This document shows positions 9,040 through 21,300 of a DNA stretch of 64,000 bases, one piece after another (the stretch's first letter is position 1; every line of letters starts with the position of its first letter). Below the pieces are notes generated by a model. That model had not been told where the DNA came from. It did no database searches and saw only the letters and a program-made list of their open reading frames with translations. Made by a program: the position numbers and the translations under genes. Location of the stretch: assembly GCF_009834535.1 (NCBI RefSeq), contig NC_045732.1, forward strand, positions 77,810,001-77,874,000. Reading direction: 5' to 3'. This DNA is from Camelus ferus (taxonomy: Eukaryota).

Positions 9040-10858
9040 TCAGGGGTCTGCCCAGAAGGGGTTGCCATCCTCAGCCTGCATGGAGTAGTAAACAAAGAGC
9101 AGGAAGGCAGCGAAGACCAGGAACAGGAGCATCTGACCCCAGAGTGGGACCTGGCGCTCCTGACCCAGACCTGCCCCAGGGGCCTGCTTTTCGGGCCGGA
9201 TGGCACGGCGGGTGAGCCACGAAGGTGGGGGAGATGAAGATGAGGACACTGGAGAGGTAGAGGAGGAGGTGGGGTAATAGGACAGGCCCAGGGAGCTTCT
9301 GGAGACGTTGGAAACGGGGCGGTAGTGTGCGATGCTCTGGTAGGCACTGTCACGACCATACACGGGGCGCTCCCTGAGGCAAAGAGGAGAGTGGATAGGT
9401 CAGGAGGGCCTGAGCCCAGAACCAGCCCCAATCCCTGGCCCTCCCTACTACTCACCTATCCTTGCCTTCTTCTTCGGAAGAGAAAAGACTGTCATCGCGA
9501 ACCTACAGAAGTGAATCAGGGTAAAAAGATACTGCCTGGTGAGGTCAGCGTGGTCCTGTCACATCCCTTAATCCAAACTTCCCTGTCCAGCCTACTCTGA
9601 ATACTGCTTAAAAGCCGGGGCCTCGCCACCCTCCAGAAGCCTTCTCAGTTCCCGGCCCTATCTGTGGGGCCTTGCCACTTGCTCAGTGACTGTCCTGACT
9701 GCCTGCACCCTACTTTCTGCCCCAGGATTCTCAGAAAGAGCTCAAACCCAGATCCCAGACCAGAGTGTAGGGCATGTCCCAGGTCCTTTAGTCAGACAGT
9801 TGTGACAGCCCCGCAAAGAAAGGTCCTGACTAGGCAGGCAACTGCTGAGCCCACCTCTCCCTGGAGGCTTAGGAGCCACCATTTGCACCCAGTGCCCCCC
9901 CAGTGTATCCAAACCCAGCGATGACCCCCTCAGGTTGTACCCAAGTATAGGGGGTCCAATGGCCAGCTCACCTGGTGGTGGAAGGTGTCAGCATCTGAGA
10001 GTGAAGCGGAGGGCTGGCGGAAGCCCTTGGATGTGCCTACAGACTCAGGCTCTCCGTAAGTCCTGGTGCTCAAGTAACTCTCCTCGTAGTAGTCATCGTT
10101 GTAGCCTTGGGAAGGAGGGGCAGCGGTAGCAGAAGGGGCAGCGGTGTCCCCCGCCTGGCGCGATGGCCCTAATCTGGCGCCCACTTGGGGGCCTGTGACA
10201 TAATTTCTCCCCTCCAAGGCCACTGTAGGACCATGGGGGTTGAGGTGTCAGGTTCTTCCTGACACCGGGATCCCTGAAGGAGTGGAACGAGGGTGCCAGG
10301 GTGCCCACCCCACCCTGGCCTTACCCTTGCTCTGGTAAAGTAAAGCGTCCTCTTTCTTGGGCAGATCGTACATATCCGAGTCCATGGACGCCGCATCTAA
10401 GTCTGAATGGGGGAGGGGCCAGGACCATTTGCTCCAGGCTCCCCTCCCTCTTCCCCGTGCCCCTCCCAACCAGCGGCCCCACCACACCCGCGAGACTCCT
10501 TCCTCCCCGTCGCCCAAAGCCTGTCCCCGCAGGCGGCCAAGTGGAGCTCTGCGGCGGGGGCCTTACCCGAGAACCGATAGGAGAAAGGGGATGCGGACGA
10601 GTTCGGGGGCGAGAGCCTCCGCCTCTGGGTCTCAAACTCGAAGATTTTCTTTTCGTAGAGCTTGCGCGTGGAACCTGGCCAGACAGGGGGCGCAAGGCCG
10701 TCAGGGGCGCGGGCTGAGAGCCCGGGGCAGCGCGGGGAGGGGGCCCGCCCGCAGCCCGCCGCCCGCCGCCGCGTACCCACGACAGGCCCGTGCGGGATGT
10801 TGTACTGGCGCAGCACGGCGGCTAGCTCGGCGTCCGACAGGCCCGCGTAGTCGTCCAT
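9040..10858 (-). CDS. EMD: Emerin (LEM-domain inner nuclear membrane protein), 6 exons, 260 aa
   Basis: Coding exons 10858-10777, 10674-10567, 10402-10325, 10105-9972, 9502-9456, 9373-9040, all GT-AG; 783 nt in total. LEM domain [38 protein letters not shown]; C-terminal TM segment [24 protein letters not shown]; ends GNPFWADP*. Confidence 0.99.
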
Positions 10859-10974
10859 GACGGGCAGCGGGCGGCGGAGGCCTAGGGGGTGGCCCGGGCC
10901 TGGCGACACGAGCCGGGCTACGGCTGCCTCGGAACGCGGCGGCAGCGCGAGCGCCTCGGGAGCGGCTGGGCTCA

Positions 10975-11499
10975 CGTCACCCCTGCGTCACGCTCGCGTC
11001 ACAGCCGCGGTCTCTGCGGGCCGCGCGCGCTGCGCGGGGCGGAGACAGGCCCGGAGAACCGCCCGCGCAGACTAGTCGAGCCACGGGAACGGGCCGGGCG
11101 GGGCTGGCCAGCCCAGACGTCACGGACGAACGGGATTGGCTGGAGGCGAAAGACGGGCGTAGAGTGCGTCAGCGGCAAAGCTGCGCAGACCAGTCCGGCC
11201 GTGGGAGCGGGCGGGGCTGCGCGCCTGGGAGAAGGGGCGGTGTCGGCGGGCCAAGCGTCGTCACACGCTAGCGCGTTCGGGCTAGACACGAGGAAGGGCG
11301 GGGCCTGCGCTCAAGGGGGAGGAGCGTAGACCCGTGGGGACGTGGGAGAGGGGCGGGGCCGGCGAGCCGAGGCGTCACCCGCTGGGACATTCGGGTGAGA
11401 AGTGAGGAAGTGAGGAGGGGCGGGGCCCGTAGCAGTGAAACCGGCATTAACTGGCTAGGACGTGGGAGCACTGGTCGTGCTCGCCCTCTGTGAGTGACG
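10975..11499 (-). promoter_or_regulatory. EMD: EMD CpG-island promoter with a cluster of CRE half-sites
   Basis: CGTCA(C) at 10975, 10986, 10997, 11118, 11167, 11259, 11373 and GTGACG at 11494; GC boxes; TATA-less. Confidence 0.75.
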
Positions 11500-12242
11500 T
11501 AGGCTCCGCTCAGTCCCCCCGCAGCCCTCGCGGTCCCCCTTCCTCCGAGATCCAGCGCTTGGGGGTCCCTGGCCGCGCCCAAGCCGGTCGCTCGGCAGCA
11601 GCATGAAGGGGCCCGATCTTAAGGGCAAGCCCTTGGAGAGCGCGGGTCCGGGCGAGGCGCTGCTGCCAGCGCTGTGCGCGCGTGCGCCACGCCAGCGGAG
11701 CCCGTGGCGCCCGGACCCCAGGCCGCCCCCCAGACTCCTTGCCCCAGCCGGCCTGCCCGCTCTGCACCGCCCTGGGCTGCGCACCTGCGCCCGCCGGTCC
11801 CCACCGCCTGCCTCCCTCCCAACCCGCTCCACCCAGGAGGAAATGGGGCACTGGGCCAGGAGGCCACAGGCGATCCAGGAGCAAGCAGCCCTGAAAGGGG
11901 CAGGGCGTGCCAATGGGCACTGGCAGAGGCCGCAGGGTGACGCATGCAGAGACAGCGAGTGTCCGTCTGACCCACCAGCAGTCCACCTGGGGCAGTAGGG
12001 GTTTCCTCTCCTGTCTGAATGGGCCCTGAGCCAGTGTGACCCAGGAGGCGGCCGGGCAGGGGTGGGGGGGGGTGTCTTCCAGACCCAGAGGGACCTGCGC
12101 AGTGGTTCCCTGAGGAACTGCTTGATGGGCTCTGTGCACCTGGGTCTGGGTGGGCTTCACTGTCACGTGGTGCAGAGGGGGCCCCCGGGACACAGGGGCC
12201 AGGGGACTGAAGGGGGCAGACCACCAAGGCCTGCTGAGGAGT
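11479..12242 (+). repeat. Inner inverted repeat, left arm (764 bp)
   Basis: Reverse complement of 17054-17829. Translations of the two arms are identical across the core (131-aa ORF 11603-11998 equals 17310-17705; the 227-aa ORF matches too); differences are confined to the ends. Confidence 0.98.
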
Positions 12243-13670
12243 CTGGACAGTCACTAGGAGTTGGTGAGGACCTTGAGCAGTGAAGAGCTGCCCCATGAAA
12301 CTGCGAAGGAGGTGACAATCACATTCTAAACAAAGCTAGATGATGGAGTGTGGGGCCAACTGAAGTGCGCCTCCCAGACCTGGGAGCCTGGGGAGGGGAG
12401 GCCCCGTCCTTTCCTCGTAGATGACAGCTGGTAACAGAAGTGAGGAGGGCTCTGGTCAGATCCAGGCAGGTTGGCCCAGCTGGTGAGGGTCACTGTGGAG
12501 GTTTGTTCATGGGGTGAAGAAGATGTAACCATACAGTTAGTGGTGAGAAGATAGGGCCCTGATTTGACTACACAGAGCCTCAGAAAATTTGCCCAAAAGT
12601 TGCAGGGTTTTCGAGTAAAGGTGAGGCCTACCATATCTCTGGAAGAGGACGAGGCGTGTGGGCCCCAAGACATGCAAGGCAGTACGAAAGTAGGGAGAGC
12701 CCTAGGCAGGCAGGGTCTTGCTGCTTATCTTTCAGAGCAGGAAGGGAGATGGTGTCAGGGCTCTGGGCTGCTCAGAGTCTGCCTCATGGAATTTTAAGTT
12801 TTGGCAAGATCCAATTCCCCAGCACCTCTCCAAGCCTTCTTCTGCAATGCTGGCCCCTGTCCCGGAGGCTGTCCTCCCCCATGCCACCCCTCCCCATACA
12901 GATCCAAGCTGTTTCCTTATGAGGTCAAAGAATTCTAAGTTTGCCTTCTCCCCTAGGAACACCCTGTCCCCCGGCACCTGCCTTGCCACTCTGCCTTTTA
13001 TCCCCTCCTCCTCCAGTCACCCCAGTATGAGGTCCCACCACCAGTGGCACCAGGAGCCTGACTTGTGATGGTCCCCTGTGCCCAAGCCCACCTGGAGACC
13101 AAGTCCAGGTGCACTGCAGGCAGACCCATCCCAGACCACCAGAAAGCAGGAGAGCCCTTGACTGTCAGAGCCCAGAGGCCCTTGGCACCACCCTTACCAC
13201 GATCACATAGTCGAGGAATTAGGGGCCCAGAGAGGGAGGAGACTTGTGCAAGGGCCCCGAGTGCAGCGATTCATTCATGGATTGTTCTCCCAGTTGGTAC
13301 CTAGTCCTGGGGTGATGATCTGGACAGTGTGGCCCAGAGGGGGTTCTGTGTCAGCAAATGGGCTATTGGGGGAAATCTAGGGCCTCAAGTGGAGTCTTCC
13401 TGGGAACAGGTGGGCAGAATTAAAGAAGAGGAGGCATTTCTCTGGAACTGCAGCGAGGGTGGAAAGGGATAGGAAGCCACTGATTCCTAGTCAAGAATAA
13501 GAAGACAGTTTCTCCTTTAAGGATGAGGAATGGGTTCTGAGCAGGATATTATATAACTTGTAATTCTAGCACTATCGAAAATTATAGGGAAAAATAATAT
13601 CAACAAGAATACATTCCTCAACATTCAGGTCCAAGGAGACAATTGTTCATTGAGCTGTTAATGTTTTCTT

Positions 13671-13805
13671 TTTCTTTCTTCCTTTTTTTTTGGGGGGGGT
13701 AATTAGGTTTATTTATCTATTCTAATACAGGTACTGGGGATTGAACCCAGGACCTTGTGCATGCTAGGCATGCACTCTACCACCAAGCTATACCCTCCCC
13801 TCTCA
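13671..13805 (-). mobile_element. Camelid-type tRNA-derived SINE (Vic-1-like) with 18-bp target-site duplication
   Basis: Minus-strand head GGGGAGGGTATAGCTTGGTGG..., B-box GGTTCAATCC and A-tail; TSD AGCTGTTAATGTTTTCTT at 13653-13670 and 13806-13823. Confidence 0.9.
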
Positions 13806-15245
13806 AGCTGTTAATGTTTTCTTAAAGATCAGAATCTTAATCCTTTGGTTCAATACAAAACTTAAGTTTTCTCTTCAAGGATGTTAAAAATCTTATAGGT
13901 TTTGCCTGCCAACAGAATGCTGTAAAACGTTGCTCAGATAGTAACAAAAGTCATAAGATGGTGAATATTGTGAAAATTAATGTGTAGGAGGTGGTCACAA
14001 TTAATATGTACCAGTGAGTGATTAGCTGACCAAAAGCCTCTCAAAGAATGCCTTGTGTTCCAAGCCTAGAACACACCAGTTTACCTTGGGACTATTGGCA
14101 TGGCTAGTTGGAGATTCAGCTTGCCTTGATTCTAGTGGTTTTCAGGAACTTTCAACACAAGGAGGAAAGGTCTTTAATTTATTACGATCTTTACTAGAGA
14201 ACAGCTGGTGCTTACAAACCTGCATTCCCTAGACCTGGAAGAAGTAGAGACCCAGAGATGCATGTGGGGAGCCTTGGCCAGGAGCTTTCTCCCTCCACCC
14301 TTTTTCTTTCTCTCCTTTAATGCAGTGGAATAGAATAGGAAATGTCAGAGTCCTTTTCAGGTAGCAAGGGAAAGGCTCATTTTGTGAACCACCTGTTTCA
14401 GTTACTTGTGTCACCCTGTGTGTGTGCACACAAGTACTGGCTCAGGATGTACAGTGTAGTTCTTATTGGGGTTTGCGGGCAAAAGGTTTAAGACACTGCT
14501 TTATGTGGCCTTCCCCAAGAAAGTGATACTTGCATTGAATACGAAGCTACCAGGAAATAGGCACATAGAAGAGGAAGAGGGAGCCTGGCAGTGCCAGGGT
14601 GTGGCTGTGCTCACCCAGTTCACAGACCCTTGGCTCTGTGGCTGCCCCACTACCACTGCCCACTCCCGGACTTAAGGACTGCACCTAACCGTGCTCCTGA
14701 GAATTCAGTCCGTCTCTGTTGCCCCCGCCCAGGCTTGGCACCCAGCGGGGGCCAAATCAGTGGCAGTCAGGATGCTAGCTCATCCCGGGTTTCAGGTCCC
14801 TGGTCCATGGTAGATTTTTGGCCGTAGGCGCTCAGTGAACACCTGCAACGGCCCGTTGCCCACCTGCACTCCAGACGGCAGACTCCGACTTGCCTGGCCA
14901 GCCCAGGCTTGAGGCAAAGGAAGGGAGTCATGACTATGGGCCACCTGGAGGAGGTGGCCTTTCCTGCAACAGGGGCCCTGCAGACCCTTAGGGCTCTTGA
15001 GGAGAGCACCCCCCTCGCCGGTCGGTGAGCTCATAGGGCGGGGGGCGTCGCCAGGCGGCCGGGGCGCTGGAGCTCGCGGCGCGCCCCCGCCCCCCCCGCC
15101 CCCGCCCCCGGCTCNNNNNNNNNNNNNNNNNNNNNNNNNNNNNNNNNNNNNNNNNNNNNNNNNNNNNNNNNNNNNNNNNNNNNNNNNNNNNNNNNNNNNN
15201 NNNNNNNNNNNNNNNNNNNNNNNNNNNNNNNNNNNNNNNNNNNNN

Positions 15246-15334
15246 GACGCCAGTGGAGCCCCGAGGCGCCCGGTGCGGGCTCACAGGCAAGCCAGGCGCC
15301 ACCCCGCGGTCGCCAGTCGTCCGCAGGACAGCAG
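15246..15334 (+). other. FLNA: FLNA non-coding exon 1 (3' part; the start lies in the gap 15115-15245)
   Basis: GGCGCCACCCCGCGGTC...GGACAGCAG matches the recalled human FLNA 5' UTR, followed by donor CAG|GTGAGG at 15334; within a CpG island with GC-box arrays. Confidence 0.85.
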
Positions 15335-16223
15335 GTGAGGCCTCCGCGGCCGGCTCCGAGCGGGATGGTCACGGAGCTGCTCGCATACCGAGGGCGGGGG
15401 TGGCGAAGTCCGGAGGCGAATCCTGAGAACTCAGGCGCGGGCGCGCACCCAGGCCGGGGCCAGGTGCAGCTGGGGTGCCTTCCCTTGGGGCCGACTTACC
15501 TGGTTTACCTGAAAATCTGTGTGTGCCTGGGAGTGTGGGAGCCCAAAGTCACGGGGGTCCCTGAGAGAGAGGGAGTCTGAGCGTTTGGCAGGACACAGGC
15601 TCTCCTGCACGCCGGTGAGCTGGCCGCTGCATGGCTATCTGGGAAGGAGGGGCCCAGAGAGCAGGACATTGTGTGGGCTGAGGGCGAGTGGCCACGTGGA
15701 AGGACAATTCACAGCCAGTATGCTTCCTGGGAGGGCGACAGTGGGTTCCTCGCTGGCACCAGTCCTCTGGGTACCAACTGCTTTGGGCACAGGGAGTTGG
15801 CTGCCGGGCTGCTGTGCTCTGTGGGAGGTCAGGCAGGGGTGTGGCCCGCACAGGAAGCAGGGGCTCCTCCAAGAGGCCAGATTCCCAGGCTGGGTCCTGT
15901 CCCAGGTTGGCTCAGAGCTGGATGTTCACTGCCAGCCAGGATGCAAGCAGCAACATCCCCAGATTCCCATGCCACCTGGGTCCAGGAGAAGTAGGTGAAA
16001 TCCGATGGGAGAGCCACCAGTATGTGCTCCAGGGTGCAGGTCAAGATGGGAACTCAGGACTTAAGTGCCCTCACCTGCCACCTGGACTTGCCTTAGTGGC
16101 CCATCCTGCCATTCTTCGACTTTCTTCACCAGCTGAATCGCCCCTGTGGGAGGGCCTGGCCTGGGGTCTGAGGACTGGGGGTGGGGTGGGAGGCGGAGTG
16201 TATCTAACATCCAAGAATCTACT

Positions 16224-16233
16224 CCAAATAAGG
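16224..16233. promoter_or_regulatory. CArG box (SRF site) in FLNA intron 1
   Basis: CCAAATAAGG fits CC(A/T)6GG; a CArG-like CCAAATAGGG at 16367-16376 and AP-1 TGACTCA at 16453-16459 lie nearby. Confidence 0.65.
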
Positions 16234-16910
16234 GAAAATATGAAAGAGCTGGATTTTGGCTTCCAGGGACTGCTGGATCTGGGGGCTTTGGGATGGGGCG
16301 CCATCTGGTGGTGATATGACGTCCCCTAGGGACAAGAACCTTCTACATCCCCATCCTTTATCACCCCCAAATAGGGAAAACCTAGGGCTGGAAGCCAGGA
16401 TGCCCAGATTCGGTCCCCTTTTCTGCTGGAGTTGGCTACTGGTCACTTACTCTGACTCAGTGTCCCTGCTCTCTGAAGATTAAGGAGTGAACACAGATGA
16501 CCCAATTGGATGGCACTTATAAAAGTGAAAATCAGTTCTCAATGGAACTCTCTCCTTGGGAACTTGCTTTCCAGTGGGACAGAGGAAGCAGGACAAGTCT
16601 CATCTCCTCTCGAATGGGGCCTGGTAGGGAGCAGTCCCCCCTCTAAAGGTTTCCCTCCCACCTACACTCCAGATCCCAGACACTGTGGTGTGGAATTTTG
16701 TGCAGGTGTGCAGGTCAGGAGAGGAGAGTGTACAGGTGAGCCTCAGACTGAAAAATGTCATTTGGAACCCCTACCACCACCATTGGTGAGGAAAAACCAG
16801 TGGGGTGACAGGCAGCCCCTAAGTGAGCATGCAGGAGGGCAGGGGAGACGCTGGCTGGGACTACAGCCCCACTGTGGGTGATGTAGACACCGCAGGTTGT
16901 GCGGCGTCAA

Positions 16911-16920
16911 CCATATTTGG
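16911..16920. promoter_or_regulatory. CArG box (SRF site) in FLNA intron 1
   Basis: CCATATTTGG fits CC(A/T)6GG. Confidence 0.65.
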
Positions 16921-17053
16921 GCATGACATGCCAGCTGACCCAGGGCCTCCTCTCCCACTGCTCTTTAGCAGATAATTTAGTTAGTACTAGTCTGCAGCTC
17001 AATCTAAGAATCAAGCAGGAGGGGCAGAGACATGCTCCTCAGACACAGGCCAC

Positions 17054-17829
17054 ACTCCTCAGCAGGCCTTGGCAGCCGTCATGGTGGTTTGCCCCCTTCA
17101 GTCCCCTAGCCCCTGTGTCCCGGGGGCCCCCTCTGCACCACGTGACAGTGAAGCCCACCCAGACCCAGGTGCACAGAGCCCATCAAGCAGTTCCTCAGGG
17201 AACCACTGCGCAGGTCCCTCTGGGTCTGGAAGACACCCCCCCCCACCCCTGCCCGGCCGCCTCCTGGGTCACACTGGCTCAGGGCCCATTCAGACAGGAG
17301 AGGAAACCCCTACTGCCCCAGGTGGACTGCTGGTGGGTCAGACGGACACTCGCTGTCTCTGCATGCGTCACCCTGCGGCCTCTGCCAGTGCCCATTGGCA
17401 CGCCCTGCCCCTTTCAGGGCTGCTTGCTCCTGGATCGCCTGTGGCCTCCTGGCCCAGTGCCCCATTTCCTCCTGGGTGGAGCGGGTTGGGAGGGAGGCAG
17501 GCGGTGGGGACCGGCGGGCGCAGGTGCGCAGCCCAGGGCGGTGCAGAGCGGGCAGGCCGGCTGGGGCAAGGAGTCTGGGGGGCGGCCTGGGGTCCGGGCG
17601 CCACGGGCTCCGCTGGCGTGGCGCACGCGCGCACAGCGCTGGCAGCAGCGCCTCGCCCGGACCCGCGCTCTCCAAGGGCTTGCCCTTAAGATCGGGCCCC
17701 TTCATGCTGCTGCCGAGCGACCGGCTTGGGCGCGGCCAGGGACCCCCAAGCGCTGGATCTCGGAGGAAGGGGGACCGCGAGGGCTGCGGGGGATCTGAGC
17801 GGAGCCTACGTCACTCACAGAGGGCGAGC
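17054..17829 (-). repeat. Inner inverted repeat, right arm (776 bp), inside FLNA intron 1
   Basis: Reverse complement of 11479-12242, with a 12-bp insertion (CAGCCGTCATGG) and two substitutions near the inner end, and GGGGGATCTG vs GGGGGGACTG near the outer end. Confidence 0.98.
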
Positions 17830-18307
17830 CACCCCATCCCCCGCAGGAGCCGTGGGGAAGGAAAGTCCCTTGTAAGGTGTGCCCGCTGGAGGCCAAGTGG
17901 TCCAGTGCCAGACACAGCTCAGCCTTTCCTCGCTGCAGCGTTTCCTGCAGCGCAGGCGCGAGACCGCAGGGCTTGGGCGCAATCTTGCTTGCTTGGGGCC
18001 CAGCGACCCTTCCTGGAGCCTGGGGGTCGGGTCAAAACCATCCGGGCGGAGGGACTCAGGGGGGCATTCCAACGGGCGGGGTGGGGCGGGGCGGGTGCGG
18101 CCCCGAAGCCCCACCCGCAGCCCCGCCTCACGGCAGTTCCGCCTCCTAGTCCCGCCCCCTGCCCGCATTTAAAGGGCTCGCTCTTTCCGTAGCGCAACCT
18201 CTGCTGTCTGCATCGTCCTGGGCTCGCTGAGGTGCCTGCGACTTTAATTAAAGGGCCGTCCCCTCGCCTAGGCTGCAGCACCGCCCCTCGGCTCCTCGCG
18301 CCTCAAA

Positions 18308-21300
18308 ATGAGTAGCTCCCACTCCCGGGCGGGCCAGAGCGCTGCGGGCGCGGCTCCGGGCAGCGGTACCGNNNNNNNNNNNNNNNNNNNNNNNNNNNNN
18401 NNNNNNNNNNNNNNNNNNNNNNNNNNNNNNNNNNNNNNNNNNNNNNNNNNNNNNNNNNNNNNNNNNNNNNNNNNNNNNNNNNNNNNNNNNNNNNNNNNNN
18501 NNNNNNNNNNNNNNNNNNNNNNNNNNNNNNNNNNNNNNNNNNNNNNNNNNNNNNNNNNNNNNNNNNNNNNNNNNNNNNNNNNNNNNNNNNNNNNNNNNNC
18601 CTTCCGCCAGATGCAGCTCGAGAACGTGTCGGTGGCGCTCGAGTTCCTAGACCGCGAGAGCATCAAGCTCGTGTCAATCGGTGAGGGCGCGGGCCTCCCC
18701 GTGGCGCGGGGAGGGTGAGGGAGGGGGACTCCGTGCGTCTTCCCATCTCCCGGGGGCTGACCCCTGGCAGACACCCTCTTAAGCTGCGGCGCTGACCCGG
18801 AGGCTCCAGGGGCCGCCCAGATGCATGTGGGCCTGGAGAACAAAGGCTCGCTGGCCAGCGGTGCGTGCGGACCGCTAGGCGCCCCGCCCGCCTGTCCCGG
18901 CTGGCCCACGCCCAGGCTGAGCTCACATCCTCCGCAGGCCGCGCCCCCGCCGCTGCGGCCGCGGTGGGAGAGGGCCTAGGGGGGCGGGCACTGGCCAAGC
19001 TCTGGCCCTGCGCCCAATGCCCCATCTCTAACGAGGCGGAGGCCAGGGCTCTGCACCCCCTAAAGCAGTTTGGAGAGGGCAGTCTGGCCTTCAGGCACCC
19101 CTGTGGTTCCTAAACAGGGGATGGAGCTTGTGGGTTCCATTATCTAGGCCCCCCACCCCCGCTAAAGATGGGGGGCCTTAATTTAGATCTCCCCCTCAGA
19201 ACTAGGGGGCCAGAGAGGACCATAGCTATTGAAAGACAAGATGGGTCTGTGCGCTGGCTAGTGAAGGGAGCTGGCTTGTAGCCTACTTAGACACCAAGTT
19301 ACTGTTGATTTCTGGCCAAACTCTTCCATGTAGGACTTGCCTTCCTGCATCTAGAATGCAGGAGTTGGTTGGGAGGTACTCCAGCATGTGCTGGGCTCAC
19401 TGCCGGCCCAATGTCCGTGTCACCGGGCTAGTGAGGCTGGAATTGACCAGACCTACTGCATCCCGGGCACTTCTTAAGATGGGAGCCGCTCAGGGACCAA
19501 CACCAGAACTGGTGACTTGGGGAGGGGGCTATGCAACAGGGAGGGAAGGGGCAAGAGCTGTTTGTTTTCAGAGGCCTTTCAGATGTCCCTTTGGCCCTGG
19601 CATGGTCCATGCTGAGCCTGGGAAGGTGAGGGACCGAGACTCAGGTTCCCCCAACCACTCAGGGCAGGTCTCAAGGGCCCCACCACTTTCTTTGGAATGC
19701 ACATCGTTGAGGCCGAGGAGGCCCACCCCTCAGTCCCAGCCTCAGTCTAGCCAAGCTGAGTCATCTCTGAGCCTTGGGGGGGGGCAACCGGATGTGGGGA
19801 GGCGGGCCACACCCCAGTTGTCTGGGGGGGGGTCTCGTCCTCCCCCCTCCCTTCTCCTCTTGTGAGCTGGCTGGAGCAGGCCTAGTTCCCAGAGCTTTGC
19901 CATATAAGGCAAAAAAATGTTGGAAAGCGGCAGTGATTAGGGGAGGGAGGGGTCAGGCTGCCCCGGGGGCTGGGGAAAGGAGGTGGGATGGGGCGGGGCC
20001 ATCCAGCCCGTCATTCTCTCAACCCGGGGCCCCGTCCTTCCCTCTCTCTTTTGTGAGGTGGACAGGGAGGGCCTCGGCCAGTCTCCTTTGGAACAGGGGG
20101 AGGGCCCAGCCCAACCTACCAGGGCTGATGAGCTTGGCCTTGTGTGTCCTCTCATGGGTCACAGTGGGCCTCAGGCCTCCTGAGGTCTCCTGTACAAGAC
20201 TCAGGATCCTGGGGGTGAGAGCCTGGTGGGAGGCCCCAGCGGGTCCTGTGCTCTTGGTCTTCTCTGAACCTTCCAGTCACCCCTAGCCTGAAGTCCCCTC
20301 TCCACCCTCCCTTGCTTGCCATCGGGGGACAGTGTTAGGTAGTGGTGTGCGACCAGGAGCAACCCCAGTCCAGGAACATGCTTTGAGTAGCATGGCGCTG
20401 GTCCTCAAACTGCTGCCTGCTGGATTCAGAGGCTGCCACATTGATGGACCTTTCCGAGGCACTCATCCCCTTCTTCCCATTCCCAAGTTGACCCACTCAA
20501 CAAGTATTTTCTCCTGATTATTGGGGGTAGAGGGTGGAGCATGCTGGCAGGAATTCCAAAGATGAGTTGCCCTCTCCCATTCTTGGAGCACCACCCCCAG
20601 CCCCCAATCTCAGGAGGAGGCTGAGACCCAGAAGGGCCTTGGGTGGGGCTTAGAGCACAGAGAGGTTGCTATAGTGATGGGGTGCAGGGTGCCCGCCCTA
20701 ACCACTTCCCCTGTGGTGAGCTTGGTGGCCACCAGCTCTCAGCCCAGTGGCCCGTTAGGTGGCGAGAACAGGCAGCAGCCGAGCACACTCTGCTGAGGCA
20801 GCGGGACTTGGGGACCCCACCCATGACTTCTGCCACCCAAACTCCCGAGCTGAGCCCTGGGCGCCCAACCCAGGCTCACTGGCTTTGCTCCTCCTCCTCC
20901 TCCTCCTTGGGCTGGGTGAGGGGCCCCTGGAATGTGTCCTGCCCATCATCCTGGCTGGCAGGCTATCCCTGCTGGGCCCCAGTGAGTCAGGGCCCTGCAG
21001 CCCAACCACTGGTTCCTTGGGGCTCCCAGCCCCTCCCTTGCACCAAGGCCTGCTGCCCAACTCCCAGCTGGGCTCTGGGGGGAGGGGGAGCACTGAGGAA
21101 GTGGTGGGGGGTGGGGCTCGCACCCTCCACCCAAAGGGTCCTTGCTCAACACCTCTGCTTTCCCTGCCGTCCACCCACTCGCCCTGGGGCAGCAGTTGTA
21201 TTTCCCAACCGCCCCACCCGCCTGCCTTCCCCTTCCTCAGCGCCAGGTCAGGGGCTCTGGCATCGAGGCCTGCTGGGGCCTGGCTGCTCCTCCTGCCCAT

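What the first reader, a model, noticed from the sequence alone, without database searches (positions are those of the whole stretch)
11479..12242. Identical ~770-bp regulatory module upstream of both EMD and FLNA exon 2, in the same transcriptional sense
Because the genes diverge, each reads the same arm sequence 5'->3' shortly before its ATG: 621 bp before the EMD ATG, and 364 bp before the FLNA exon 2 acceptor (479 bp before its ATG). The module is CpG-rich and carries GTGACG (11494, 11938), CCAAT (11910) and E-box CACGTG (~12164). Emerin and filamin A both act in actin and nucleo-cytoskeletal mechanotransduction and MRTF-SRF signalling (established). A duplicated and homogenised cis-module could hard-wire their co-regulation independently of any inversion.
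Basis: partly seen in the sequence, partly recalled or inferred. Interest (0 to 1): 0.7.

Follow-up and report, generated by a model that had tools for sequence, protein, structure and literature searches.

The report
Ancient inverted repeat between EMD and FLNA
The identical ~770-bp stretch before camel EMD and FLNA exon 2 is real, and is one copy-pair of an inverted repeat present in all eight placental mammal lineages sampled and kept alike within each species by gene conversion, but apart from one invariant 18-base element there is no sign that it is a conserved regulatory module.

Summary
Observation confirmed. Arms 11479-12245 and 17051-17829 are inverted copies: a 748-nt core with 4 mismatches, then a 12-nt indel and 19 more matching nt. 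Arm 1 ends 621 nt from the EMD ATG. Arm 2 ends 364 nt from the FLNA exon 2 acceptor and 479 nt from its ATG.

It is not an assembly artefact or camel novelty. The window equals the Camelus ferus assembly, two other camel assemblies carry the repeat, and so do right whale, warthog, Bos, cat, elephant, mouse lemur and hare, with largely orthologous boundaries.

Arms are 92-99.5% alike within a species but 61-86% between species. They pair by species with 100/100 support, and side-monophyly is rejected (p = 7e-5). This is concerted evolution dating to before the eutherian radiation.

The regulatory reading is only partly supported:
- Between species the arms evolve as fast as neighbouring unique DNA.
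- The conserved CArG boxes lie in unique FLNA intron 1.
- Arm 2 lies inside FLNA intron 1, downstream of exon 1.

One 18-mer, GAGGAAATGGGGCACTGG, is nearly invariant in both arms everywhere.

The parts
11479..12245 (-). Arm 1 (EMD-side arm), read in the EMD sense on the - strand. Core is 11479-12226, with a 19-nt extension after a 12-nt indel.
   Evidence: the orthologous arm is present in 10 other loci
17051..17829 (+). Arm 2 (FLNA-side arm), read in the FLNA sense. It lies inside FLNA intron 1. Core is 17082-17829.
   Evidence: intron placement
12246..17050 (.). Spacer between the arms. It holds the putative FLNA promoter CpG island, exon 1 and the unique part of intron 1. It is collinear in all species compared.
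11837..11854 (+). Invariant 18-mer GAGGAAATGGGGCACTGG, arm 1 copy.
17454..17471 (-). Invariant 18-mer, arm 2 copy (reverse complement).
15246..15335 (+). 3' part of the putative non-coding FLNA exon 1. The donor CAG|GTGAGG at 15335/15336 is conserved in 8 of 8 species. The 5' part is under the N mask 15115-15245 and was not read.
   Evidence: inference; no RNA evidence
16221..16251 (+). 31-nt invariant block with a perfect CArG box, CCAAATAAGG, at 16224-16233. It is in unique intron 1, outside the arms.
16911..16920 (+). Second CArG box, CCATATTTGG, a valid CArG in 8 of 8 species (Bos CCTTATTTGG). It is in unique intron 1, 140 nt from the inner end of arm 2.
18193..18371 (+). Start of FLNA exon 2. 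The acceptor YAG at 18192 is conserved in 8 of 8 species, and the ATG is at 18308.
10776..10858 (-). EMD exon 1 coding part (ATG at 10858; [28 protein letters not shown]).
   Evidence: LEM domain emerins

Best explanation
The two ~770-bp copies are the arms of an ancient inverted repeat in the head-to-head EMD-FLNA interval. One arm lies about 0.5-1.3 kb upstream of the EMD ATG. The other lies in FLNA intron 1, about 0.5-1.3 kb upstream of the FLNA ATG. Together they bracket the FLNA promoter and exon 1.

The duplication arose once, before the placental mammals diverged. Since then the arms have been repeatedly overwritten on each other by intrachromosomal, non-crossover gene conversion across the 4.7-6.5 kb spacer. 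They therefore stay 92-99.5% identical within each species while drifting between species at about the neutral local rate. The likely GC bias of conversion would explain why the arms are about 15 points richer in G+C than the DNA just inside them.

The near-identity in camel thus reflects recombination mechanics, not selection on a 770-bp regulatory module. Crossovers between the arms would invert the FLNA promoter and exon 1, and are presumably removed by selection.

Shown: the repeat, its age, concerted evolution, the lack of overall constraint, and the 18-mer. Inferred: the conversion mechanism and its GC bias, selection against inversion, and exon 1 placement. Any shared cis-function is confined to one ~18-25-nt invariant core, and possibly the CpG-island-like outer third.
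For: - Repeat in the window.
- Independent assemblies: the same repeat, with the same arm-to-arm differences, is in three Camelus assemblies.
- Other lineages: orthologous repeat in whale, warthog, Bos x2, cat, elephant, mouse lemur and hare. Outer boundaries map to camel 11470-11508 / 17800-17844 in 6 of 7 species.
- Identity pattern: 92-99.5% within species and 61-86% between, with F-F = E-E = F-E.
- Tree: arms pair by species 100/100 in 8 lineages, and the AU test rejects side-monophyly (dlnL 2077, p = 7e-5).
- Rate: tree length of the arms is 1.69-1.77 against 1.20-1.66 for unique neighbours, and identity and alignability are similar.
- Difference pattern: arm-to-arm differences are fewest in the central fifth and sit only at the edges in camel.
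- Composition: arms are 0.68-0.75 GC against 0.53-0.57 in the adjacent DNA in all 8 species. The inner thirds are GC-rich but CpG-poor.
- Orientation: the spacer is collinear in all assemblies.
Against: - An 18-mer is essentially invariant in both arms in all species, about 0.8-1.2 kb upstream of each ATG. So part of the arm is under selection.
- The outer third is CpG-island-like in 7 of 8 species, which suggests germline hypomethylation typical of regulatory DNA.
- There are zero differences in 1,577 arm positions between C. ferus and the dromedary assembly, where 4-5.5 are expected (P 0.004-0.016).
- Homogenisation has persisted in every one of 8 lineages for roughly 100 My, which may need more than neutral conversion.
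Confidence: 0.62

Rival explanations
1. One reading: the arms are a shared cis-regulatory module (enhancer or promoter-proximal element). Because it is duplicated in the sense orientation before both genes and kept identical, it couples EMD and FLNA transcription.
For: - Same-sense placement about 0.5-1.3 kb upstream of both ATGs holds in all species.
- The 18-mer is invariant in both arms.
- A CCAAT/NFI-half-site-like GCCAATGGGCAC is kept in 5 of 8 species in both arms.
- The outer third is CpG-island-like.
- A conserved GC-box/TATA-like region just upstream of exon 2 could be a second FLNA promoter, for which arm 2 would be upstream.
- Both proteins act in MRTF-SRF signalling (PMC6867627, and my own knowledge).
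Against: - The arms overall evolve as fast as or faster than adjacent unique DNA.
- Three of the four named motifs are camel-only.
- The arms have no CArG box, and the conserved CArG boxes are outside the arms on the FLNA side only.
- Arm 2 is downstream of the main FLNA start site.
- With frequent conversion, selection on one copy alone would keep the 18-mer in both copies, so two functional copies are not implied.
Confidence: 0.2
2. The repeat is selected as a structure. In this reading the paired inverted elements bracket the FLNA promoter and act as a boundary or looping pair, or as an NAHR-invertible promoter cassette.
For: - The arms bracket the putative FLNA promoter and exon 1 in all species, with similar geometry (spacer 4.7-6.5 kb).
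- The structure has persisted for about 100 My in 8 of 8 lineages.
- The same reader flagged this reading separately (s1-148981).
Against: - All 11 assemblies have the spacer in the same orientation.
- Inversion would detach FLNA exon 1 from the gene, and FLNA loss is severe (my own knowledge).
- No CTCF-like motif was recognised by eye in the conserved core. This is a weak test, since no motif library was available.
- The neighbouring unique DNA is retained just as stably.
Confidence: 0.1
3. The repeat is an assembly artefact, or a recent duplication specific to camels.
For: Near-perfect identity in a single assembly could in principle come from a chimeric long read or a very young duplication.
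Against: - The repeat is present in three Camelus assemblies with identical arm-specific differences.
- It is present in 7 other eutherian genera.
- DNA runs of four organism labels hold 0.94-0.97 of the sampled words of 12372-18371.
Confidence: 0.01
4. The arms encode something: an unannotated exon, a protein or a structured RNA.
For: The arms contain open reading frames of 131-227 aa.
Against: - None of the four arm ORFs has a Pfam match.
- No Rfam family matches in the arms.
- Many indels and 61-86% identity between species are not compatible with a conserved frame.
- The ORFs are the kind expected in 70% GC DNA.
Confidence: 0.02

Closest known systems
Large inverted duplications flanking FLNA-EMD (human X palindrome P24; Small et al. 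1997; Caceres et al. 2007, as summarised in PMC8327919 and PMC3961182)
   Same: Same locus. Both are inverted repeats kept alike by gene conversion, and both are proposed to date back more than 100 My in eutherians.
   Different: The known repeats lie outside both genes (about 11 kb arms and a roughly 48 kb spacer in human) and mediate inversion of the whole FLNA-EMD block. [quoted passage not shown] The repeat here lies between the two genes, has 0.5-0.8 kb arms and a 4.7-6.5 kb spacer, and is orthologous with shared boundaries in all 8 lineages. No inversion of its spacer is seen. No flanking repeat of the classical kind was found inside this 64-kb window.
Primate X- and Y-chromosome palindromes with arm-to-arm gene conversion (PMC8327919)
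   Same: Concerted evolution of the arms, paralogues grouping by species, and GC-rich arms.
   Different: Those palindromes have arms of at least 8 kb that carry testis-expressed gene families, and they are conserved for about 25 My. This repeat is sub-kilobase, non-coding, promoter-proximal and much older.
Shared or bidirectional promoter elements of head-to-head gene pairs
   Same: EMD and FLNA are divergent neighbours. The arms adjoin CpG-island promoter regions and are read in the same sense by both genes.
   Different: The start sites are several kb apart, not under 1 kb. The element is duplicated rather than shared. One copy is intronic. Sequence constraint is confined to about 18-25 nt.

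Membership tests
Inverted repeat under concerted evolution (arm-to-arm gene conversion) | Two arms in inverted orientation with high identity | tested here: met
   748 nt, 99.5% identical; 88-99.5% in the other species
Inverted repeat under concerted evolution (arm-to-arm gene conversion) | Orthologous arms at orthologous positions in several species (single origin) | tested here: met
   11 loci from 8 lineages; boundaries map to the same camel coordinates
Inverted repeat under concerted evolution (arm-to-arm gene conversion) | Paralogous arms group by species, not by side | tested here: met
   100/100 support in 8 lineages; AU p = 7e-5 against side-monophyly; F-F = E-E = F-E
Inverted repeat under concerted evolution (arm-to-arm gene conversion) | Direct signs of conversion (tracts, GC bias) | tested here: inconclusive
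   Differences are concentrated at arm edges, and the arms are about 15 points richer in GC than adjacent DNA. No polarised substitutions or observed events.
Classical FLNA-EMD flanking inverted duplications (P24 arms) | Arms lie outside, and flank, both FLNA and EMD | tested here: not met
   Both arms lie between the EMD ATG (10858) and the FLNA ATG (18308)
Classical FLNA-EMD flanking inverted duplications (P24 arms) | Mediates inversion of the gene block between species or individuals | tested here: not met
   The spacer is collinear in all 11 assemblies
   It is upstream of EMD. For FLNA it is downstream of the putative exon 1 (intron 1) but upstream of exon 2 and of a conserved TATA-like/GC-box region.
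   Tree length is 1.69-1.77 against 1.20-1.66 for neighbours. The exception is one 18-nt invariant block.
   GTGACG x2 and CACGTG are camel-only, and CCAAT is kept in 5 of 8 species. None is enriched beyond chance after allowing for 7 motifs tested.
   No CC[AT]6GG in the arms. The CArG boxes at 16224 and 16911 are in unique intron 1, and no inverted homology reaches them.
   Needs ATAC, ChIP, CAGE or reporter assays
CpG island | At least 200 nt, GC above 0.5, CpG o/e above 0.6 | tested here: met
   Met only for the gene-proximal half: 11479-11830 has GC 0.76 and o/e 0.80. The outer thirds have o/e 0.63-0.92 in 7 of 8 species. The inner half has o/e 0.25.
Invertible promoter cassette | Both orientations of the spacer occur | tested here: not met
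   Only one orientation is seen in 11 assemblies. Population data were not available.

The most novel reading that the evidence does not exclude
The inner EMD-FLNA inverted repeat is maintained by selection, not merely by self-perpetuating conversion. In this reading the paired, oppositely oriented invariant cores (GAGGAAATGGGGCACTGG), together with the CpG-island-like outer parts, form a eutherian-wide two-copy element. It sits about 0.8-1.2 kb upstream of both ATGs and couples the EMD and FLNA promoters, or insulates them from each other. That would make gene conversion the means by which two regulatory copies are kept matched for about 100 My.
Probability: 0.18. Interest if true: 0.75.

Novelty: new member of a known kind. 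Interest (0 to 1): 0.55.

Why it matters
EMD and FLNA are disease genes, for Emery-Dreifuss muscular dystrophy and periventricular heterotopia among others. They sit in a textbook example of recurrent, repeat-mediated inversion.

This work shows a second, nested inverted repeat in the same locus:
- It has sub-kilobase arms that bracket the FLNA promoter.
- It is orthologous in all eight lineages sampled, covering three of the four placental superorders.
- It still evolves in concert after roughly 100 My.

That makes it one of the oldest small repeats of this kind with demonstrably orthologous arms. It is a clean natural system for measuring gene conversion and GC bias at short range.

There are practical consequences too. 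Short reads multi-map in both arms, so epigenomic and variant calls next to the EMD promoter and in FLNA intron 1 are unreliable unless multi-mappers are handled. The arms are also a potential substrate for small pathogenic inversions or deletions of FLNA exon 1.

Tried and rejected
There is therefore no RNA splice or start-site evidence, no read depth, and no junction check. Independent assemblies were used instead.
2. Isoform-X2 emerins (P0001, P0057) are not on record for locus look-up. Armadillo and wallaby loci came back without DNA. Xenarthra and a marsupial outgroup are therefore missing, and the ancestral arm cannot be named.
3. I tested whether the ancient duplication once reached the CArG boxes, because the CArG-like block at 12912-12928 resembles the reverse complement of the block at 16221-16251. 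nhmmer profiles found no inverted homology beyond the arms (best E 0.22-4), while the arm control gave 1e-112 to 1e-205. Rejected.
4. A structured RNA or a coding function in the arms: no Rfam or Pfam match.
5. Classical flanking FLNA-EMD repeats in the window: none found down to about 70% identity, only SINE-like and filamin-repeat matches.
6. Caceres et al. 2007 (PMC2141818) is not held in the library. I could not check whether it mentions this inner repeat. Four literature searches found no mention.
7. Identifying the flanking genes through long ORFs and Pfam gave nothing useful.
8. No transcription-factor motif library was available. The factor binding the 18-mer is unassigned. By eye it has an ETS/NFAT-like GGAA core and does not look like CTCF.
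9. Letters of other camel assemblies under the window's N masks were neither printed nor used. The camel row in the multi-species alignments was the window itself, with its Ns.

Full report
**1. Observation**

The window holds exactly one long inverted repeat, with arms 11479-12226 and 17082-17829. It is 748 nt long, has 4 mismatches, and the arms are 4,855 nt apart.
- A gapped alignment continues past a 12-nt indel for 19 more matching bases, to about 12245 and 17051.
- The mismatches lie at 11514, 11515, 12200 and 12219, all within 36 nt of a core end. The central 685 nt are identical.
- On the - strand, `ATG GAC GAC TAC...` at 10858 opens an emerin LEM-domain exon.
- On the + strand, `ATG AGT AGC TCC CAC...` at 18308 opens FLNA, preceded by a `YAG` acceptor at 18192.
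- The distances are as stated: 621 nt to the EMD ATG, 364 nt to the acceptor and 479 nt to the FLNA ATG. Both genes read the arm in the same sense.

**2. Anatomy around it**

The spacer contains a CpG-rich stretch, a masked block (15115-15245, not read) and then `...GGACAGCAG|GTGAGG` at 15335/15336.
- That donor, and the exon 2 acceptor, are conserved in all eight species compared. The 90 nt before the donor are among the best conserved in the interval.
- I infer that this is non-coding FLNA exon 1. Arm 2 therefore lies inside FLNA intron 1, and arm 1 lies between the FLNA and EMD promoters.
- Only the gene-proximal half of the arm is CpG-island-like: GC 0.76 and o/e 0.80, against o/e 0.25 for the inner half.

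**3. It is real, and not a camel peculiarity**

I searched with an open frame covering EMD exons 1 and 2, which returned emerins of many mammals. Cluster look-up and locus look-up then gave 11 loci with 10-kb flanks.
- The window is base-for-base identical to the *Camelus ferus* assembly GCA_009834535.1 (0 differences in 20,348 nt).
- Two further Camelus assemblies carry the same repeat with the same arm-specific differences. These are GCA_000803125.3 and GCA_036321535.1, which share their differences from the window and so appear to be dromedary.
- DNA runs of four organism labels hold 0.94-0.97 of the sampled words of 12372-18371.

The repeat is also present at the same place in seven other genera:

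| Species | BLAST identity of the two arms | Aligned length |
|---|---|---|
| Right whale | 87.7% with gaps (97.8% over ungapped columns) | 816 nt |
| Warthog | 99.45% | 730 nt |
| Two *Bos* assemblies | 91% | about 735 nt |
| Cat | 94.6% | 773 nt |
| Asian elephant | 97.2% | 540 nt |
| Mouse lemur | 91.7% | 589 nt |
| European hare | 98.0% | 491 nt |

- Outer boundaries map to camel 11470-11508 and 17800-17844 in six of the seven. Elephant is shorter.
- Inner boundaries coincide within Laurasiatheria and are somewhat eroded in lemur, hare and elephant.
- A single origin before the split of Laurasiatheria, Euarchontoglires and Afrotheria is the only economical reading.

**4. Concerted evolution**

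- Arms are 92-99.5% identical within species over ungapped columns, but only 61-86% between species. Same-side comparisons are no closer than cross-side ones.
- In a maximum-likelihood tree the two arms pair by species with 100/100 support in all eight lineages. Forcing the FLNA-side arms into one clade costs 2,077 log-likelihood units (AU p = 7e-5).
- Arm-to-arm differences are fewest in the central fifth.
- Arms are 68-75% GC against 53-57% in the 500 nt just inside them, in every species. The inner thirds are GC-rich yet CpG-poor. That looks like GC-biased conversion rather than a hypomethylated island, but this is an inference.
- The spacer is collinear in all assemblies. Only non-crossover outcomes have been fixed.

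**5. Is it a regulatory module?**

- Across the eight species the arms accumulate 1.69-1.77 substitutions per site. Adjacent unique non-coding segments show 1.20-1.66, and the exon 2 5'UTR shows 0.52. Simple identity and column-conservation measures agree. The arm as a whole is not constrained.
None is convincingly enriched over dinucleotide shuffles.
- The arms contain no CArG box.
- The interval does hold two perfect, deeply conserved CArG boxes. `CCAAATAAGG` at 16224 sits inside a 31-nt invariant block, and `CCATATTTGG` is at 16911. Both are in unique intron 1.
- Profile searches find no inverted homology reaching the CArG boxes. This fits FLNA being an SRF target (PMC6867627) through elements that EMD does not share.
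- The exception is `GAGGAAATGGGGCACTGG`, at 11837-11854 and 17454-17471. It is invariant in both arms of essentially all species, with single changes in the FLNA-side arms of hare and elephant. It occurs nowhere else in the window.
- Its 12-nt core occurs exactly once per arm in 10 of 11 loci, about 0.8-1.2 kb upstream of each ATG.
- This core is a genuine footprint. With frequent conversion, however, selection on one copy would preserve both.

**6. An unexplained detail**

*C. ferus* and the dromedary assembly differ at 0.32% over the locus but at 0 of 1,577 arm positions. About 4.1-5.5 differences are expected (P about 0.004-0.016). GC-biased correction of new AT-ward mutations, low mutability of unmethylated CpGs, or chance could each explain it.

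**7. Other exclusions**

- No Rfam family matches in the arms. The only hit is a SINE-type tRNA relic at 13726-13797 in the spacer.
- The arm ORFs have no Pfam match.

**8. Comparison with what is known**

- The literature I could search describes only the large duplications that flank FLNA and EMD and drive the recurrent inversion. These are human palindrome P24 (Small 1997; Caceres 2007), cited in PMC3961182, PMC8327919 and PMC8719250.
- PMC8327919 notes that those flanking repeats are not orthologous between all species.
- The repeat here is a different object. It lies between the genes, has sub-kilobase arms, is orthologous everywhere sampled, and shows no inversion.
- I could not read Caceres 2007, so prior mention cannot be excluded.

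**9. Verdict**

- The 'hard-wired MRTF-SRF co-regulation module' part is not supported beyond one small invariant element.
- The finding is best filed as a new, very old member of the class of gene-converting inverted repeats, nested inside a famous one.

Noticed in passing
window 16221-16251 and 16911-16920: Two perfect CArG (SRF) boxes in unique FLNA intron 1, both kept as valid CArG boxes in all 8 eutherians compared (the second reads CCTTATTTGG in Bos). The first sits in a 31-nt invariant block. They are likely the real SRF/MRTF input to FLNA.
   Followed up: partly
window 12912-12928: A 17-nt invariant block, TTTCCTTATGAGGTCAA, in the spacer on the EMD side. It contains a CArG-like CCTTATGAGG overlapping an AGGTCA half-site. 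Its function is unknown.
   Followed up: partly
window 17860-17869 and 18168-18184: Two elements conserved in all 8 species lie between arm 2 and FLNA exon 2: an NF-kB-like GGAAAGTCCC just outside arm 2, and a TATA-like TTTAAAGGGCTCGCTCT 9-25 nt before the exon 2 acceptor. GC boxes lie upstream. This may be a second FLNA promoter.
   Followed up: no
window 1-64000: No inverted repeat of the classical kind flanking FLNA-EMD is detectable in this 64-kb camel window. From memory, this means the FLNA-EMD block is inverted relative to the human reference order.
   Followed up: partly
L011 (hare) 13945-19086: Gene calls with filamin-repeat domains lie downstream of EMD on the + strand. They suggest a partial FLNA copy within a flanking duplication in the hare.
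   Followed up: no
window 10859-11478: The EMD proximal promoter carries 6 GTGACG (CRE half-site-like) and 9 GGGCGG motifs in 620 nt. This is far denser than in the arms.
   Followed up: partly
window 10397-10975 (- strand): EMD exon 1, intron 1 and exon 2 form one uninterrupted 192-codon open frame, because the GC-rich intron 1 has no in-frame stop.
   Followed up: no
window 13726-13797 (- strand): A tRNA-like match (Rfam RF00005, 39.8 bits) lies inside a dispersed repeat that also occurs at about 36.5, 45.2, 51.6, 61.4 and 63.4 kb. It is most likely a tRNA-derived SINE.
   Followed up: partly
window arms versus L003: There are zero substitutions in 1,577 arm positions between C. ferus and the dromedary assembly, where 4-5.5 are expected.
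   Followed up: partly
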